IMG/VR virus record: IMGVR_UViG_3300020380_000001
Location: 62,001 to 126,000 of that record
DNA: 64,000 bases
Reading direction: 5' to 3' (one strand)
Within the stretch, counting starts at the first letter, position 1; each line of letters opens with the position of its first letter. Position numbers and translations under genes: made by a program. Positions 8,647 through 55,923 of this stretch are shown here, in pieces. The notes beneath the pieces were generated by a model. That model was given only the letters and a program-made list of their open reading frames with translations. It had not been told where the DNA came from and made no database searches.

Positions 8647-9735
8647 ATGCGCCTGGGCTTCAGTGCTGACGAGCTTGACAATGTAAAGCCGTATAGTGCG
8701 ATGTTGATGGATGACTTGAATGTTGCTGAGAAGATGATTCTCGATGCGCATCATGCAGGAAACCGTTCGGTAGTAATTGACTCGGGCACGCACCTCACTG
8801 AAACGTCTGGTTTTATTGAATCAGTTAACATCTTAAATGGCGGCAAGAACCTGTCGCCTATCCCCGCTAAAGTACAAATCGAACACTCTGTCGGTTACGG
8901 CGCCAAGTTTAAAGTGAACGTTGATAGCTACGGTGCCATAACTAGTGTGGATGTAGTAGAGCCTGGATCAGGTTATTACCCTGTTTTAGCCAAGGCTTAC
9001 CCGCCGGTCCGTTTTACGGAGAACGAACATACGTCGGCTGAGTTTACTGTAGTCGCTAGCGATACTGGCGCAGTACTAAAGGTGGTGCCTACTAAAGCAG
9101 GAACCGGGTACACTGTTGGTTCTGATATTATTATAGATCACCCAAATGGTTTCGGCGCTTCGGCGCAAATATCCGAGGTTGATTCTCAGGGAGGCATCCT
9201 GAGTGTAAGTGTATCTGCACCCGGTACAGGCTATTCGCCACGCTTACCTAGTATTGTTGTTTCCCACCCAGCAGGCAAAGGATTTGTAGCAGGCGCCATA
9301 CAGACTGAAAATGGTCGCATAAAGTCGATAGCAGTAAAGAGTGGCGGGTCTGGTTACAGTCCTATCCAGTGCCGTGTGCGCATGTCTAGTCGTACAGGAT
9401 CCGGTGCAAAGCTTAAGCCCTTGTTTTCGGCTGCGGGTGAAATTATAGGTGTTACCTTGTTATCAGGTGGCAGCGAGTATTCAGTGCATGATACAATTAC
9501 CGTTACCCCGAGTGAGTTCCATACAAACCCTGTACCAGCTATTTTAGAGCCTGTTGTAAATGTTAGCACGCCAACATCTACACCTTACTGGCAAGCATAC
9601 AGGAGTCCTGTGAAGTCCCAAGAAAGAGACTTTGTTTACAGATTTATAAGTATTTTAGAGGCTGCAAAATTTACTGTTAATGTAGTAACCAATCCGAGAA
9701 CACTCAACACACTAAAAATAACAATAAGTTGGTGA
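8647..9735 (+). CDS. virion structural protein with about five ~38-aa beta repeats ending in GxGY
   Basis: VVEPGSGY, PTKAGTGY, VSAPGTGY, VKSGGSGY, LLSGGSEY; repeat type seen in T4-like baseplate and tail proteins. Confidence 0.6.
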   Translation: MRLGFSADELDNVKPYSAMLMDDLNVAEKMILDAHHAGNRSVVIDSGTHLTETSGFIESVNILNGGKNLSPIPAKVQIEHSVGYGAKFKVNVDSYGAITSVDVVEPGSGYYPVLAKAYPPVRFTENEHTSAEFTVVASDTGAVLKVVPTKAGTGYTVGSDIIIDHPNGFGASAQISEVDSQGGILSVSVSAPGTGYSPRLPSIVVSHPAGKGFVAGAIQTENGRIKSIAVKSGGSGYSPIQCRVRMSSRTGSGAKLKPLFSAAGEIIGVTLLSGGSEYSVHDTITVTPSEFHTNPVPAILEPVVNVSTPTSTPYWQAYRSPVKSQERDFVYRFISILEAAKFTVNVVTNPRTLNTLKITISW

Positions 9736-29771: not shown

Positions 29772-30812
29772 ATGCCAAATCATTATGGAATTAGCGTAGT
29801 GGGTGCTGAACCCGGACAGCCACCAACATCCGGTGGTCCTACACTAGAAGCATTTATGTTCGATACATTCGAAGACGCTGTGCCGTTTATAGCTAGTTAT
29901 GAGCCGCCTACGAATTTCGAAGTGTTTCAGACATGGAACCGTTTCTCTAATAACCTTTTCTTTGAACCCGGCGACCCGTTGACCAATGGCGCAGGCGCGT
30001 TTATTTACAACTCATCAGCAGACCGCATACAGTGCACGGCTAATACTACCCAATTTGTTGGATTCTCAAGCCCAACCAAAACCCGTAACGTGACAATTGA
30101 AGTCACAGTTGGCTCTACCGCACAAGATGATGATGCGCTGGCTGTTATTGTTGCCCATGAGCCTTACACTAACGCCGAGGGAAATCCAGCTAGTAGGTTC
30201 TTAGCCGTCATGCGACACACTGGCGGGTTGGTACTAGGTCAAGGCGCAGGTCAATATTATCTGGTGTGTTTGTCTTATAATGATCCTGATTTTACCGGGG
30301 GCGGTTACTTACCTCTCGGCAGTCCGGTAAACTGGAACAACGGCCGTAATTCAAACAACGGTGGCTGGGCATCAAGCGGTAAAAGTAGGATTCGCATAGA
30401 ACGCGAGGGGCCGGTGATACGCACTTGGGCAACACCGTTTTTAAACCAAACATTAGCTGCGATGTCGGAGATAGATCCTAGTGAATACAATCCTAACAGC
30501 ATTATCAACATTAACACCAGCAATTATCCTGAGCTTGCGTGGGTAGGCGCTAATGAGTTGGCTTTTGGCTATGGATGCCAGTCCCAGGACGATGCATACT
30601 TCGCAAATATAGAAATAGAAGGCGGCCTGCTAAACGATACTATTTTTGTGGCGTCTACTAACAGTGTTTACAAATACAACTACGACACAGGTGAATGGGA
30701 TATTGTGGAAGGCGAAACTGTGCAGAGTCGCTTAGGTAACCGCATCGATATAGTTAACCCGAACACTGGTAAAAAGTACGTCGTTGACATAAACGGTAAC
30801 TTAATAACTTAA
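29772..30812 (+). CDS. probable late virion protein with a lectin/jelly-roll-like domain
   Basis: Late box at 29740; Gly/Asn/Thr- and aromatic-rich beta composition. Confidence 0.5.
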   Translation: MPNHYGISVVGAEPGQPPTSGGPTLEAFMFDTFEDAVPFIASYEPPTNFEVFQTWNRFSNNLFFEPGDPLTNGAGAFIYNSSADRIQCTANTTQFVGFSSPTKTRNVTIEVTVGSTAQDDDALAVIVAHEPYTNAEGNPASRFLAVMRHTGGLVLGQGAGQYYLVCLSYNDPDFTGGGYLPLGSPVNWNNGRNSNNGGWASSGKSRIRIEREGPVIRTWATPFLNQTLAAMSEIDPSEYNPNSIININTSNYPELAWVGANELAFGYGCQSQDDAYFANIEIEGGLLNDTIFVASTNSVYKYNYDTGEWDIVEGETVQSRLGNRIDIVNPNTGKKYVVDINGNLIT

Positions 30813-52561: not shown

Positions 52562-52679
52562 AGTTTGTCCTTTTTTATTTCTTTTAGTCTACTATTAGTG
52601 CAACCCTAAGTAAACCTTTTCTTGAAAGTGAAACTTTCTCAGACAGTAAATATGATAAAACAACATAACGGGGCAGAAT

Positions 52680-52997
52680 ATGATTCATAATGTTCGAGTG
52701 TATACCTCGCGCGAGCTGGCTGCTGAAGAAATAGACGAGTTGATAGACGCTGTGGATTACGTTGTAGACGTAGTGCCGCGTGAGTTCTACGACAGTGAAC
52801 ACAATATGCAAGTGAGCTACCTTAACGTATACGATCAAGAAGAAGGTGACTGGGTATATGAGATGTCAGTAGCGCGTATGCTACAAGACACAGACGCACA
52901 AGAAATCATCGAAATACTAAGTGAGTTCCTGGATGCAGACTTTGACTTAGACGCATCCTTTGAAGAAGATGAATGCGAGGCGTGCCGTGCCGATTAA
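52680..52997 (+). CDS. hypothetical acidic protein
   Basis: ORF track. Confidence 0.65.
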   Translation: MIHNVRVYTSRELAAEEIDELIDAVDYVVDVVPREFYDSEHNMQVSYLNVYDQEEGDWVYEMSVARMLQDTDAQEIIEILSEFLDADFDLDASFEEDECEACRAD

Positions 52998-54174
52998 ATT
53001 TAGTGGTCCTGTGAAACCGCGAAAACTAAAATCACCTGATCCGATTAATATGCCTGTAGTGCGTGACAACAAAGCGCAACGAGTACGAAGCGATGTTGTG
53101 TACTACAAAGCAAATGGTGAATTGCCGCGAGTTGAGCCAAACTGGACTGCTATGTCCGAATACTACCAGATTCCTGGCCACACAGCAAACGGCGGGGTAG
53201 ACTCAGTTGACGTAAACGGCGACATAATGGCTGTAATGTCTTCGGCAACTAACACAGTTTATATCTTTAAGAAAGACGTAAACGGCGACTACCAACAAAC
53301 TGATTCAACCTCGCAATCTGGCGGCGATTATTCAGACATTCACCTTATGCCTGTTGAAGGCAAGGTTGTATACTCTGCGCCTTTGTCAAATAGTAACGAG
53401 GGGCGATTAGTTGCTATGGACTTGGACTTTACAACAGGCATCCTGGACCAGGCATCTAGAACAGTTTATCCATTAAGTACCGGGAGAGACAACTCGTACG
53501 ACGGTCGTGGTATAATTAGTATCGGAAATACCTTATTCAGTGGCGCACCGGGGTATTACTTGAGCAGTGCCAGCGCACGTGGTGGCCTGTTATCGTTCCG
53601 TGACCCTGCGTCCGGCGCATTAAAGCCCCTTGACGTGTCTTACTTAGGCGGCTTAAATGAATCAAATAATCATGTTTTCGGTAACCGTATATATAACGAA
53701 GATGGTTTGTTCGCTAACACACTAGCAACTGATGGTAACCGCCTACTAGTACTTGCGCCTGGTGCTGCGTCACTCAACACAGCCGATAACGGTTATATAT
53801 CTGTATTCGACTATGACGACACGAATCAGTCACTAACAGAGATACAGAAGATAGATAACCCGGCGCTGCCGCAGTATGCAGGAACCCAAGCTTCAATAAG
53901 AGCCATAGCCGCACTGAATGGTAAAATGCTTGCGCTACTCAATGTGGGCGGTCCGGACAACGACTACGACCCCTTACGGACGTCTTTGGTTGAATATATA
54001 TGGGACGGTAGTGCGTATAATCAATCAGGATGGTCGGATGTAGTGTTATCCCCTGATTGGACGGCTAACAGTACAGACAGCGCAATAGCCCATATGACTA
54101 TGCTAAGTGATACTGAACTATTAATACCCGGTACTAATATCTCGGGTGGCAAAATTTATAAGGTAACAAGATAA
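52987..54174 (+). CDS. modular virion-surface protein 1: shared N-terminal module plus beta-propeller-like domain
   Basis: GTG start giving MPIKFSGPVKPRKLKSPDPINMP; FG-GAP-like blades (FSGAPGY, LLVLAPG). Confidence 0.65.
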   Translation: MPIKFSGPVKPRKLKSPDPINMPVVRDNKAQRVRSDVVYYKANGELPRVEPNWTAMSEYYQIPGHTANGGVDSVDVNGDIMAVMSSATNTVYIFKKDVNGDYQQTDSTSQSGGDYSDIHLMPVEGKVVYSAPLSNSNEGRLVAMDLDFTTGILDQASRTVYPLSTGRDNSYDGRGIISIGNTLFSGAPGYYLSSASARGGLLSFRDPASGALKPLDVSYLGGLNESNNHVFGNRIYNEDGLFANTLATDGNRLLVLAPGAASLNTADNGYISVFDYDDTNQSLTEIQKIDNPALPQYAGTQASIRAIAALNGKMLALLNVGGPDNDYDPLRTSLVEYIWDGSAYNQSGWSDVVLSPDWTANSTDSAIAHMTMLSDTELLIPGTNISGGKIYKVTR

Positions 54175-54985
54175 TGCCAATTAAATTTACCGGCCCCGTA
54201 AAGCCGAAAAAACTAAAATCACCCGATCCGATTAATATGCCTATAGTAAGGAATGACAAAGTGCCAAAGATTAAATCTGAAGTATTGTACTATAAAGACA
54301 ACGGTGAGATGCCACCAACCGGCGAACGCGTTCCTGAAAGTAGACTATCACGTATTGACTGGAAAGTAGCTGGAGACAAACTCTCTGTGCTTGACTACCA
54401 AACAGGTATTGAGTACTTGCGATTAAGTGAATCAGTCGGTCGATCAATTGATAATGTCAGTGCTAACTTTGGTCCTGGTGGCGACTTCGAAGGCTGGCGC
54501 CTAGCTACTGAAGCAGAGATCAATTCTTTTATGGATTACGTAGTTGCATCAGGCGGTTCAGGTCCTGGTTTTACCACTGACGGACAGAGCGCAAACGTTA
54601 GCACATCTCTACAAGAGTGGCAGGACTTTGTTCGTATAATGGGCTACACCTACACAGTATCAGACAGACTGCACTCGTTTGCTATATTCTACGACGGATC
54701 CGAAATACTTAACTCGGGTGTGTTAGGATACCTAAGCGGCGATGCGCGTTTTAGACGTAGTCACAACGATGGCGGCATTGACAATAATACTTCAAGTTCA
54801 TTGGTATCTGCAGGTGTGTGGATAGTAAATGACGGCGGCGTTAGTATTGAGTCCATTGAATATCCTGAACTCAATAAAAACAACCCTAACTCGCCGTATA
54901 ATCAAGGAGGCTAATTGTGCCAATTAAATTTACTGGTCCGGTAAAGCCAAAAAAACTAAAATCGCCTGATCCGATTAATATGCCT
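53038..54985 (+). repeat. three identical 18-nt copies of GATCCGATTAATATGCCT (53038, 54225, 54968) inside ~120-nt near-repeats at the gene starts
   Basis: Read directly from the sequence. Confidence 0.85.
54174..54914 (+). CDS. modular virion-surface protein 2: shared N-terminal module plus Lcl/DUF1566-like domain
   Basis: MPIKFTGPVKPKKLKSPDPINMP; DYQTGIEY...FEGWRLATEAE; C-terminal NNPNSPYN. Confidence 0.65.
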   Translation: MPIKFTGPVKPKKLKSPDPINMPIVRNDKVPKIKSEVLYYKDNGEMPPTGERVPESRLSRIDWKVAGDKLSVLDYQTGIEYLRLSESVGRSIDNVSANFGPGGDFEGWRLATEAEINSFMDYVVASGGSGPGFTTDGQSANVSTSLQEWQDFVRIMGYTYTVSDRLHSFAIFYDGSEILNSGVLGYLSGDARFRRSHNDGGIDNNTSSSLVSAGVWIVNDGGVSIESIEYPELNKNNPNSPYNQGG

Positions 54986-55636
54986 GTAGTGCGTGATAAT
55001 AAGGCGCCGCGTGTTAAGCAAGACGTCGAGTACTTCAAAGTACACGGCACGATGCCTACTGTGGCACCGCCATTAGGACCACCGGAAGGACAAACAATAG
55101 GTGCCGCTGATATAGCACAAGCAGGCGATAATAAAGCTTTTATTGATTTCCGTACTGGGCTGGAATGGGTTCGACTATCGAGAACAAATGCGTTTACTGA
55201 TGCGACTATCCAAGCTGAGCTACAGGCAGGCGGTCAATTCGAAGGGTTTCGTATTGCTAACGAGGCTGAAACGGATTCGTTACTTCGCACGATTACGCCT
55301 AATTATTTTAACCCCGTTCATGTCTATTCAGTAGATACGCACTACATTGTGCCGGAACAATGGAACAATTGGAATTCCATAATGGGCATAACAGGTAACA
55401 AATACGGAAGGAACTGGTCGTACGGTATATACGACACCGGATCTGGCTACAAGCACGGCGGAACTGACTATTTTGCTGAATCTAATAGGCTGCCTAATAG
55501 GCTGATGAAGTTCAATAAAGATGATGCCCTTGACTTTGATTTTATGGGCATATTCTTAGTGTCAGACGGAGGGAACACCTTGTTGAGTCAAGAGTTCCCT
55601 CATTACATGGCTAACAACCCTAACTCGCCGTATAAT
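54879..55636 (+). repeat. identical 24-nt direct repeat AACAACCCTAACTCGCCGTATAAT (54879-54902 and 55613-55636) at the 3' ends of two genes
   Basis: Read directly from the sequence. Confidence 0.85.
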
Positions 55637-55645
55637 GCGGGTTAA
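54917..55645 (+). CDS. modular virion-surface protein 3: shared N-terminal module plus Lcl/DUF1566-like domain
   Basis: MPIKFTGPVKPKKLKSPDPINMP; DFRTGLEW...FEGFRIANEAE; C-terminal NNPNSPYN. Confidence 0.65.
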   Translation: MPIKFTGPVKPKKLKSPDPINMPVVRDNKAPRVKQDVEYFKVHGTMPTVAPPLGPPEGQTIGAADIAQAGDNKAFIDFRTGLEWVRLSRTNAFTDATIQAELQAGGQFEGFRIANEAETDSLLRTITPNYFNPVHVYSVDTHYIVPEQWNNWNSIMGITGNKYGRNWSYGIYDTGSGYKHGGTDYFAESNRLPNRLMKFNKDDALDFDFMGIFLVSDGGNTLLSQEFPHYMANNPNSPYNAG

Positions 55646-55863
55646 ATAGACTTAACTAGGGCAGCAATACCACGCCATGATTTGTATTGCTGCTCTACTT
55701 CTAAAAGAGTATCAAACTCTTTGTAACCAGGCCTACCAAAGTTATATGCACGAGCCGCAGCATTGTCGGTAACCATAAGCCAACGATCACCTAACTTTTC
55801 AAGTGTCATTTTGTTACCGCGCGACTCTGTGTAAAATTTGTTTTTGCTAAGCATCTGAATCAT
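55642..55863 (-). CDS. early hypothetical protein
   Basis: ORF track; consensus sigma70 promoter upstream. Confidence 0.7.
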   Translation of the reverse strand: MIQMLSKNKFYTESRGNKMTLEKLGDRWLMVTDNAAARAYNFGRPGYKEFDTLLEVEQQYKSWRGIAALVKSI

Positions 55864-55894
55864 AACTATACCTTACTTGTTTAAGTTCAAATAG

Positions 55895-55923
55895 AGTATA
55901 GCAATGAAACAAATTATTGTCAA
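55895..55923 (-). promoter_or_regulatory. sigma70-type promoter TTGACA-17-(TGn)TATACT
   Basis: Near-perfect consensus upstream of 55642-55863(-). Confidence 0.7.

What the first reader, a model, noticed from the sequence alone, without database searches (positions are those of the whole stretch)
52987..55645. Three-gene cassette with a constant ~45-aa N-terminal module and swappable C-terminal domains
Seen: all three begin (M/V)PIKF(S/T)GPVKP(R/K)KLKSPDPINMP(V/I)VR...V.Y(Y/F)K..G..P and then diverge into a beta-propeller-like domain (gene 1) or Lcl/C-lectin-like domains (genes 2 and 3). At DNA level there is an identical 18-mer in all three 5' ends and an identical 24-mer at the 3' ends of genes 2 and 3, flanking divergent middles. 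Inference: a common anchor docks interchangeable adhesins on one virion site (Hoc-like display or tail appendage), and the conserved flanks act as recombination handles for domain shuffling.
Basis: partly seen in the sequence, partly recalled or inferred. Interest (0 to 1): 0.7.

Follow-up and report, generated by a model that had tools for sequence, protein, structure and literature searches.

The report
Shared docking peptide on swappable phage adhesins
A 306-kb marine T4-like jumbo phage carries a family of small lectin-like and propeller proteins that all start with the same 47-residue peptide, which most likely plugs interchangeable host-binding heads into one site on the virion; this is a new version of a known phage trick.

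Summary
The three adjacent genes are g1 52987-54174, g2 54174-54914 and g3 54917-55645. They share a basic, proline-rich N-terminal module of about 47 aa. g1 continues into a beta-propeller; g2 and g3 continue into C-type-lectin-like (Lcl_C/DUF1566-like) domains.

The genome is a 306.5-kb T4-like marine jumbo phage. It holds two more copies directly downstream of tail-fibre-like genes, one of which is homologous to a mass-spectrometry-confirmed PA5oct virion protein.

In 1.84 billion representative proteins the module occurs in only 13 clusters. All belong to this phage clade, and the module is always at residues 1-49.

Close relatives carry 5-10 such genes in different orders and numbers. They also show mosaic genes and N-modules exchanged between loci.

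The module is conserved at the protein level (dN/dS about 0.1, synonymous sites near saturation). It changes in concert within each lineage.

Best reading (about 0.5): it is a docking peptide that attaches interchangeable adhesin heads to a common virion site, probably on the tail-fibre apparatus. Recombination at the module boundaries reshuffles the repertoire. Virion association and the docking partner remain inferred.

This is a new variant of the known "conserved peptide / branched receptor-binding protein" principle.

The parts
52987..54174 (+). g1: N-module plus beta-propeller protein (395 aa, GTG start)
   Evidence: ORF; alignment; model pLDDT 76, pTM 0.79, all-beta over residues 55-394; propeller matches in PDB and in viral models; a relative has ATG at 52987
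52987..53127 (+). N-module of g1 (codons 1-47), basic and proline-rich, predicted disordered
   Evidence: 10 K+R, 7 P; pLDDT under 50 and no secondary structure
54174..54914 (+). g2: N-module plus C-type-lectin-like (Lcl_C/DUF1566-like) domain (246 aa); its ATG overlaps the g1 stop
54174..54314 (+). N-module of g2
54917..55645 (+). g3: N-module plus a second, divergent C-type-lectin-like domain (242 aa, GTG start after a strong AAGGAGG)
54917..55057 (+). N-module of g3
53038..53055 (+). exact 18-mer shared by g1, g2 and g3 (also at 54225-54242 and 54968-54985); encodes DPINMP
   Evidence: 3 matches, 0 expected; not exact in g4 and g5
54879..54902 (+). exact 24-mer at the 3' end of g2 (encodes NNPNSPYN); second copy at 55613-55636 in g3
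   Evidence: both copies carry the same synonymous variants within each genome
55613..55636 (+). second copy of the 24-mer, at the 3' end of g3
55635..55648 (+). indel junction: the closest complete relative has two more N-module genes (384 aa and 255 aa) inserted here
52680..52997 (+). upstream co-oriented ORF of 105 aa, very acidic (31 D/E, 5 K/R), overlapping the g1 start; probably the same transcription unit; role unknown
   Evidence: an RNA-library contig of a relative spans 52679-53036

Best explanation
g1-g3 and two further paralogues elsewhere in the genome are small modular adhesins of the virion surface. Each has a 47-residue basic, proline-rich N-terminal peptide that is disordered on its own. 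This peptide acts as a docking tag for one common site on the virion, most likely on the tail-fibre apparatus encoded by the 518/695/804/664-aa operon that directly precedes the second array. A short linker follows, then a globular head of a carbohydrate-binding type: a six-bladed-type propeller or a C-type-lectin-like domain here, and also a ConA-like jelly roll and others in relatives. Because every head uses the same tag, heads can be added, lost or exchanged without redesigning the attachment. Recombination at or next to the repeated tag-coding DNA (and, for g2 and g3, a conserved 3' motif) changes the number, order and combination of heads between closely related phages.

Shown: the architecture, the folds, the clade restriction, protein-level purifying selection, concerted change of the tag within lineages, and cassette gain, loss and mosaicism.

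Inferred: virion incorporation, the docking site, and glycan binding.
For: - Copies. The genome has five copies with E 2e-19 to 2e-27.
- Clade restriction. A profile search of 1.84e9 representative proteins finds the module in only 13 clusters. All score E <= 4e-18, the module is always at residues 1-49, and nothing weaker turns up.
- Heads. They have ligand-binding folds: propeller, C-type-lectin/Lcl_C-like and a ConA-like jelly roll in the relative protein P0010.
- Tag structure. The tag is predicted disordered (pLDDT under 50) and carries 10 K+R and 7-8 P in 47 residues.
- Genomic context of the second array. Array 2 (g4, g5) and the 6-7-gene arrays of relatives start right after a conserved run of 696-, 803/804- and 664-aa genes. 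The 804-aa protein has tail-fibre PHROG repeats and matches PDB 'tail collar fibers'. The 664-aa protein is 36% identical over its full length to PA5oct EST35_0303, a virion protein found by ESI-MS/MS, and that region of PA5oct also encodes an MS-detected kelch-like protein and a putative adhesin.
- Selection on the peptide. Between paralogues dN is 0.04-0.2 while dS runs from 0.5 to saturation.
- Concerted evolution. Tags on different heads within one lineage are 75-81% identical. Tags of this phage and of a third lineage average 64%, even though the orthologous heads are 58-88% identical. All six lineage-C proteins found share the FSGSARP...MPSVRENI signature, and at least three of them (P0027, P0029, P0002) lie on one 5.3-kb contig whose other two genes have the lengths of P0028 and P0030.
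- Exchange. document it.
- Known precedent. Secondary receptor-binding proteins dock through short conserved N-terminal peptides (PMC6872550, PMC13352976, PMC10253068).
Against: - There is no proteomic or structural evidence that any of these proteins is in the virion. The phage is known only from metagenomes.
- The window cassette itself sits among small genes of unknown function, not in a structural module.
- The gene after array 2 has a weak 'head decoration' PHROG match, so adjacency does not cleanly separate tail from head.
- No T4 gp9/gp10-type branching domain was detected in the genome by Pfam.
- The heads lack the trimeric beta-helix or fibre shaft typical of known branched receptor-binding proteins.
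- The g2 model is of low confidence, and no Pfam family is matched by sequence.
Confidence: 0.5

Rival explanations
1. Capsid decoration (a Hoc-like display): the N-module binds the gp23-like capsid lattice and shows the lectin-like heads on the head surface rather than on the tail.
For: The phage has a T4-type gp23 major capsid protein. The heads are small globular adhesin-type domains without fibre shafts. The 949-aa gene just downstream of array 2 has a 'head decoration' PHROG match at E 4e-14.
Against: There are no Ig-like domains. The anchor is N-terminal and disordered, unlike Hoc, whose capsid-binding part is C-terminal (from established knowledge, not tested here). Array 2 and all the relatives' arrays directly continue the tail-fibre-like operon. 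Having 5-10 different decorations compete for one capsid site has no precedent.
Confidence: 0.15
2. Not surface adhesins. In this reading the shared N-terminus is a targeting or packaging signal, for example a capsid-targeting sequence like that of the T4 internal proteins, or a tag for a host or phage intracellular partner. The proteins would then act inside the capsid or the cell.
For: The T4 internal-protein locus is a known case of a constant short N-terminal signal followed by variable bodies in a hyperplastic locus (established knowledge). The window cassette lies among early-looking small genes rather than structural genes. RNA-library contigs show only that a relative's locus is present in a metatranscriptome.
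Against: The module has no conserved (L/I)-x-E-type cleavage motif at a fixed position; the acidic residue alternates between D and E, and P3 is K or R. At 47 residues it is much longer than a capsid-targeting sequence. Propeller, C-type-lectin-like and ConA-like heads are typical extracellular binding folds. Array 2 is embedded in the fibre operon.
Confidence: 0.17
3. The conserved 5' ends are kept mainly as DNA or RNA elements (recombination handles, or a translation-initiation or regulatory signal), and the peptide itself has no binding role.
For: Exact 18-mers and 24-mers exist. Recombination breakpoints and assembly-graph breaks fall at the module. The 3' 24-mer shows the same synonymous variants in both copies within each genome.
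Against: Synonymous sites between paralogous modules are near saturation while amino-acid change is low (dN/dS about 0.05-0.15). g4 and g5 differ from the 18-mer at synonymous positions. DNA identity between paralogous modules is only 73-82%, which is poor substrate for homologous recombination. Lineage-wide concerted amino-acid substitutions point to a protein partner.
Confidence: 0.04

Closest known systems
Secondary receptor-binding proteins with a conserved N-terminal docking peptide in branched or adaptor-based systems (Klebsiella phages KP32/K11/KP34; K1-5/K1E/SP6 gp46/gp47 on adaptor gp37; G7C gp63.1; RaK2/phiK64-1) - PMC6872550, PMC13352976, PMC10253068
   Same: A short N-terminal sequence is conserved among otherwise unrelated receptor-binding proteins of one phage group. 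It is different in each group. The C-terminal specificity parts are exchanged horizontally. The genes sit consecutively next to fibre genes. The host belongs to the PA5oct/RaK2-related jumbo phage world (abstract listed).
   Different: The heads here are small monomer-sized lectin-like or propeller domains, not trimeric beta-helix depolymerases or spikes. The tag is 47 aa, strongly basic and proline-rich, whereas the Klebsiella peptides are 7 aa to tens of aa and not positively charged (PMC6872550). There are up to 10 tagged genes per genome in two separate loci. No T4gp10-like branching domain was found. No homology to any known anchor was found.
Bdellovibrio bacteriovorus fibre proteins with variable C-terminal tip domains (PDB 8oks, Bd2740 C-terminal domain)
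   Same: This is the best structural match of the g2 head (Z 6.1). From my recollection of the literature, not tested here, that family also combines a constant N-terminal part with many alternative adhesive tips.
   Different: Those are long trimeric fibres of a predatory bacterium. There is no sequence similarity, and Z is modest on a low-confidence model.
Legionella Lcl C-terminal domain / DUF1566 (Pfam PF07603) and other C-type-lectin-like binding domains (invasin/intimin, DGR variable proteins Mtd and TvpA)
   Same: The fold of the g2, g3 and g5 heads matches, and language-model neighbours carry PF07603. The motif pattern is similar: TGLxW..., G(W/F)R(L/I)A..E..., GVFLV.
   Different: No member reaches any Pfam score. 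The genome has no reverse transcriptase, so this is not a diversity-generating retroelement target.
T4 internal proteins IPI-IPIII with a shared capsid-targeting sequence in a hyperplastic locus (established knowledge)
   Same: A constant short N-terminal signal, variable bodies, and a gene set that differs between relatives of a T4-like phage.
   Different: The module is about 4 times longer and has no conserved protease-site pattern. The bodies have extracellular binding folds, and one array is part of a fibre operon.
T4 Hoc
   Same: A non-essential-looking surface display of binding domains on a T4-type virion would be functionally analogous.
   Different: Hoc is built of Ig-like domains with a C-terminal capsid-binding part (established knowledge). 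None of that is seen here.

Membership tests
Branched/adaptor receptor-binding-protein systems with a conserved docking peptide | Short N-terminal sequence conserved among receptor-binding proteins whose remaining parts are unrelated | tested here: met
   about 47 aa conserved across 13 clusters with at least 5 unrelated head types
Branched/adaptor receptor-binding-protein systems with a conserved docking peptide | Primary receptor-binding protein or adaptor carrying a T4 gp10-like branching domain as the docking site | tested here: not met
   The Pfam T4_gp9_10_N model finds nothing in the 306.5-kb genome. This is a sequence test only; a structural homologue could have been missed.
Branched/adaptor receptor-binding-protein systems with a conserved docking peptide | Genes located in the tail-fibre or structural module | tested here: inconclusive
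   Array 2 and the relatives' arrays directly follow fibre-like genes and a homologue of a PA5oct virion protein. The window cassette does not.
Branched/adaptor receptor-binding-protein systems with a conserved docking peptide | Physical attachment of the peptide to the partner; presence in virions | not testable with these tools
   The complex prediction of the 664-aa protein with the tag gave 'no answer'. No proteome exists for this uncultured phage.
Branched/adaptor receptor-binding-protein systems with a conserved docking peptide | Trimeric beta-helix depolymerase or spike body | tested here: not met
   The heads are a propeller and C-type-lectin-like domains.
Pfam Lcl_C / DUF1566 (PF07603) | Sequence match above the family's gathering score | tested here: not met
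   No hit for g2, g3 and g5 or any of 16 aligned members, even at E <= 10.
Pfam Lcl_C / DUF1566 (PF07603) | C-type-lectin-like fold | tested here: met
   The VIA-align top 50 are almost all C-type-lectin-like folds, including 8q4e Lcl. AFDB DUF1566/Lcl_C clusters score E 5e-6 to 8e-3. Caveat: the model has pLDDT 52.
Beta-propeller (Kelch/WD40-like) | Toroidal all-beta fold of 4-stranded blades | tested here: met
   No Kelch or WD40 sequence repeat was detected by Pfam, and there is no profile similarity to the PA5oct kelch-like virion protein.
T4 internal proteins (capsid-targeting sequence) | N-terminal signal of about 10 aa ending in a conserved (L/I)-x-E prohead-protease site | tested here: not met
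   Inspection of alignment A3: no such conserved motif, and the module is 47 aa long.
T4 Hoc-like decoration | Tandem Ig-like domains plus a C-terminal capsid-binding domain | tested here: not met
   No Ig-like domain in the Pfam or fold results; the conserved part is N-terminal.
Diversity-generating retroelement target (C-lectin-fold variable protein) | Reverse transcriptase and a template/variable repeat pair | tested here: not met
   No RVT_1 in the genome. The only repeats at the locus are the N-modules and short motifs.

The most novel reading that the evidence does not exclude
The 47-residue tag is a universal plug that lets up to ten different lectin-like heads compete for the same docking sites. 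Each virion of one genotype would then carry a mixed, possibly stochastic, assortment of adhesins. This would be combinatorial host or particle binding (bet-hedging) in an abundant marine jumbo phage, with the tag and its socket co-evolving as a lineage-specific lock and key.
Probability: 0.2. Interest if true: 0.8.

Novelty: new variant of a known kind. Interest (0 to 1): 0.55.

Why it matters
If the tag really docks heads onto the virion, it defines a new, compact and clade-specific plug-and-socket pair for receptor-binding modules in uncultured marine jumbo phages, which recur in ocean metagenomes from 2014 to 2025.

It would explain how such phages vary their adhesin repertoire (5 to 10 heads among genomes that are about 90% identical) without touching the tail machinery.

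It would also give a sequence signature, the N-module profile, for finding all receptor-binding candidates in this clade even though none matches Pfam or PHROGs.

Finally, the concerted lineage-specific changes of the tag offer a natural co-evolution data set for identifying its socket.

Tried and rejected
- Pfam and PHROGs on g1-g5 and on eight relatives' proteins gave no significant family.
- Sequence search of the PDB with g1 and g2 gave nothing.
- megablast and tblastn against 50,697 phage records with the locus and with g2 gave no match.
- Word-index searches with the C-domains alone found only orthologues.
- Complex prediction. I resent it with this genome's own two sequences only. The verdict for the 664-aa protein plus g2 residues 1-55 was 'no answer', which is no evidence either way.
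- A profile comparison of the g1 family with the PA5oct kelch-like virion protein showed no similarity.
- The T4 late-promoter motif TATAAATA is not enriched in the genome and is absent upstream of g1. The sigma-70 and terminator scan was unremarkable.
- Laying contigs of eight public runs on the locus showed no joints or chimeric forms. Contigs merely break at the N-modules, and partial matches are the paralogues g4 and g5. Contigs drop rare variants, so this says little.
- PHROG scans of further neighbours (the 2136-, 479- and 501-aa proteins and members of the tandem family) gave nothing.
- The T4 gp9/10 N-domain and reverse transcriptase are absent.
- A paralogue of the acidic 105-aa upstream ORF near array 2 was sought and not found.
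Full report
**What is there**

The window is bases 62,001-126,000 of a 306.5-kb viral record with direct terminal repeats. The phage has a T4-type gp23 major capsid protein. It also encodes rIIA/rIIB, ribonucleotide reductase and NAD-salvage genes.

At the flagged coordinates three co-oriented, tightly packed ORFs are present:
- g1, 52987-54174
- g2, 54174-54914
- g3, 54917-55645

Their first 47 residues share 29 invariant positions, and the rest diverges. There is a 139-nt repeat family at 73-74% identity and an exact 24-mer at the 3' ends of g2 and g3. An exact 18-mer occurs in all three 5' ends, with none expected by chance.

**The family is larger than the finding**

The same module heads two more genes about 100 kb away on the other strand: g4 (390 aa, a paralogue of g1) and g5 (373 aa, two lectin-like domains in tandem). 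The g1-g2 and g4-g5 junctions are alike, so a propeller-plus-lectin pair was duplicated.

A profile of the module was searched, without a word index, against 1.84 billion representative proteins. It found only 13 clusters, all at E <= 4e-18, with the module always at residues 1-49 and no weaker matches. The module is therefore an invention of one marine phage clade. That clade is seen in Tara and other ocean assemblies with contigs of 212-315 kb, and the locus is held by marine metagenome runs dated 2014-2025.

**Folds**

- The g1 family models well (pLDDT 76, pTM 0.79). Residues 55-394 form an all-beta propeller, and residues 1-49 have no structure with pLDDT under 50. Foldseek gives Kelch, WD40 and 6-blade propellers. 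Among viral models it gives the kelch-type protein of a PA5oct-like phage, an Atu_ph07 'hemagglutinin' and several virion proteins.
- The g2 model is poor (pLDDT 52), so I treat the fold call as moderately supported. Still, nearly all of the 50 best PDB matches are C-type-lectin-like folds. They include a Bdellovibrio fibre tip domain (Z 6.1), TvpA, PvdO, animal CTLDs, invasin/intimin, Legionella Lcl (Z 4.0) and Mtd. AlphaFold-DB clusters named DUF1566 / Lcl C-terminal score E 5e-6 to 8e-3, and the best match (E 9e-7) is unnamed. Language-model neighbours also carry PF07603.
- By sequence, no Pfam or PHROG family is met.
- A relative's 263-aa member has a ConA-like jelly-roll head.
- All head types are classic ligand-binding or carbohydrate-binding folds.
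- There is no reverse transcriptase in the genome, so the lectin-like heads are not targets of a diversity-generating retroelement.

**Context**

The window cassette lies among small genes of unknown function. It is preceded by an overlapping, very acidic 105-aa ORF.

Array 2 is the tail end of an operon of large proteins of about 518, 695, 804 and 664 aa:
- The 804-aa protein carries tail-fibre repeat families and matches 'tail collar fibers' in the PDB.
- The 518-aa protein ends in a weak depolymerase-type beta-sandwich.
- The 664-aa protein is 36% identical over its full length to PA5oct EST35_0303, annotated as a structural protein by ESI-MS/MS. That PA5oct region also holds an MS-detected kelch-like protein and a putative adhesin.

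In relatives, the conserved 696-, 803- and 664-aa genes seen in the fetched loci are followed by 6-7 or more consecutive N-module genes. This is the main reason to place the family on the virion, near the fibres. It is contextual evidence only. The gene downstream of array 2 has a 'head decoration' PHROG match, so a capsid location is not excluded.

**How the module evolves**

1. Between paralogues in this genome, dN is 0.04-0.2 while dS is 0.5 to saturated. The peptide, not the DNA, is under selection.
2. I compared this phage with its closest complete relative (about 90% identical, colinear across 18 kb). The immediate flanks have dS 0.13-0.22, the heads 0.34-0.73, and the modules 0.5-1.5. 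The most conserved peptide is thus encoded by the least conserved DNA between 'orthologues'. This is expected if modules are replaced from other copies.
3. Direct cases of exchange:
   - The relative's g2 module is 92% identical to the module of an unrelated 195-aa gene at the other locus, but only 81% identical to its orthologue here.
   - In two Tara contigs the gene after the 388-aa propeller gene begins with an identical 80-nt module. It then continues either as a 390-aa propeller or, after a switch inside the module, as a 195-aa lectin-like protein. The arrays read 388-195-528 versus 388-390-193-528.
4. Copy number is 5 here and about 10 in the relative, including a clean two-gene indel right after the g3 stop. 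A third lineage has a g4-type propeller directly followed by a g2-type lectin gene.
5. At the protein level the modules change in concert. All five here start MPIKF. Most copies in the next lineage start MPIRF. All six in a third lineage carry FSGSARP...MPSVRENI on unrelated heads. Within-lineage identity is 75-81% versus 64% between lineages, although the orthologous heads are 58-88% identical.
6. The 3' 24-mer of g2 and g3 behaves the same way. Both copies share one pair of synonymous variants here and the other pair in the relative.

**Interpretation**

A disordered, basic, proline-rich peptide is kept by strong purifying selection. It sits at the extreme N-terminus of many unrelated binding domains. 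It changes in step across all paralogues of a lineage, and it is encoded at the end of a fibre operon. The best explanation is a docking tag that fits one socket on the virion.

This is the logic of the 'conserved peptide' secondary receptor-binding proteins of Klebsiella, K1-5/SP6, G7C and RaK2-type phages (PMC6872550, PMC13352976, PMC10253068). PA5oct, whose virion protein is homologous to the gene preceding array 2, belongs to that RaK2-related jumbo group (abstract listed). Consecutive fibre-region genes of PA5oct also share N-termini with each other.

The differences are substantial:
- The heads are small, non-fibrous lectin-like or propeller domains.
- The tag is a new 47-aa sequence.
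- A genome holds up to ten tagged genes in two loci.
- No gp10-like branching domain was detectable.

I therefore file it as working like that system, without claiming membership of any known anchor family.

**What remains open**

- Virion association, the socket and the ligands are inferred.
- The single complex prediction allowed gave no answer.
- Contig-level read data showed no chimeric joints, but contigs hide rare variants.
- RNA-library contigs of a relative cover parts of the locus. This is weak evidence of transcription only.
- The recombination-handle idea is half right. Breakpoints cluster at the module, but paralogous modules share only short exact stretches, and their conservation comes from selection on the peptide.

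**Verdict**

This is a new variant of a known kind, of moderate to good interest.

Noticed in passing
G000:C1 about 226,980-239,890 (locus L017 1982-14892, minus strand), outside the window: A tandem array of about 16 similar-sized ORFs (218-315 aa). Many end in a shared C-terminal motif of the type (L/M)RLQYG, RLNYG or LNGY. The array lies directly upstream of the fibre-like operon that ends in g4 and g5. Two members gave no PHROG match. It is a second large paralogue family in this genome.
   Followed up: partly
window 52680-52997 (+): A very acidic 105-aa ORF (31 D/E, 5 K/R) overlaps the g1 start by 11 nt. It is 95% identical in the relative and has no paralogue in the genome. It could be a partner or chaperone of the basic tag, but this is pure speculation.
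   Followed up: partly
locus L015 (PA5oct MK797984.1 203120-212043): Consecutive PA5oct fibre-region genes share N-termini pairwise: 0301/0302 start MSNLND(Y/F)FG, and 0304/0305 share an (F/L)GKKGG motif. They lie on either side of the homologue of the 664-aa protein. Shared N-termini among neighbouring fibre genes seem to be a theme in this jumbo-phage group.
   Followed up: no
locus L006 709-2411 (G000:C1 208,708-210,410, minus strand): An RCC1-repeat propeller protein (426 aa, Pfam E 4e-64) is followed by a stand-alone response-regulator receiver domain protein (140 aa, E 1e-12). This is an unusual signalling-type pair for a phage.
   Followed up: no
window 8647-9735 and 29772-30812 (+): Two proteins (362 aa and 346 aa) have repeat-type matches to PHROG virion, baseplate-wedge and tail-fibre families. 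These are probably Ig-like surface domains scattered among metabolic genes.
   Followed up: no
window 52600-55900 in run X16: One public run is labelled with an organism rather than as a metagenome. It holds a 94-99% identical variant of the locus at about 184x word depth on contigs of 63-69 kb. It might reveal the host or a culture carrying this phage.
   Followed up: no
locus L018 4714-11124 (G000:C1 200,713-207,123, minus strand): A 2136-aa ORF with no PHROG match. In size and position it recalls the giant MS-detected structural protein EST35_0300 of PA5oct.
   Followed up: no
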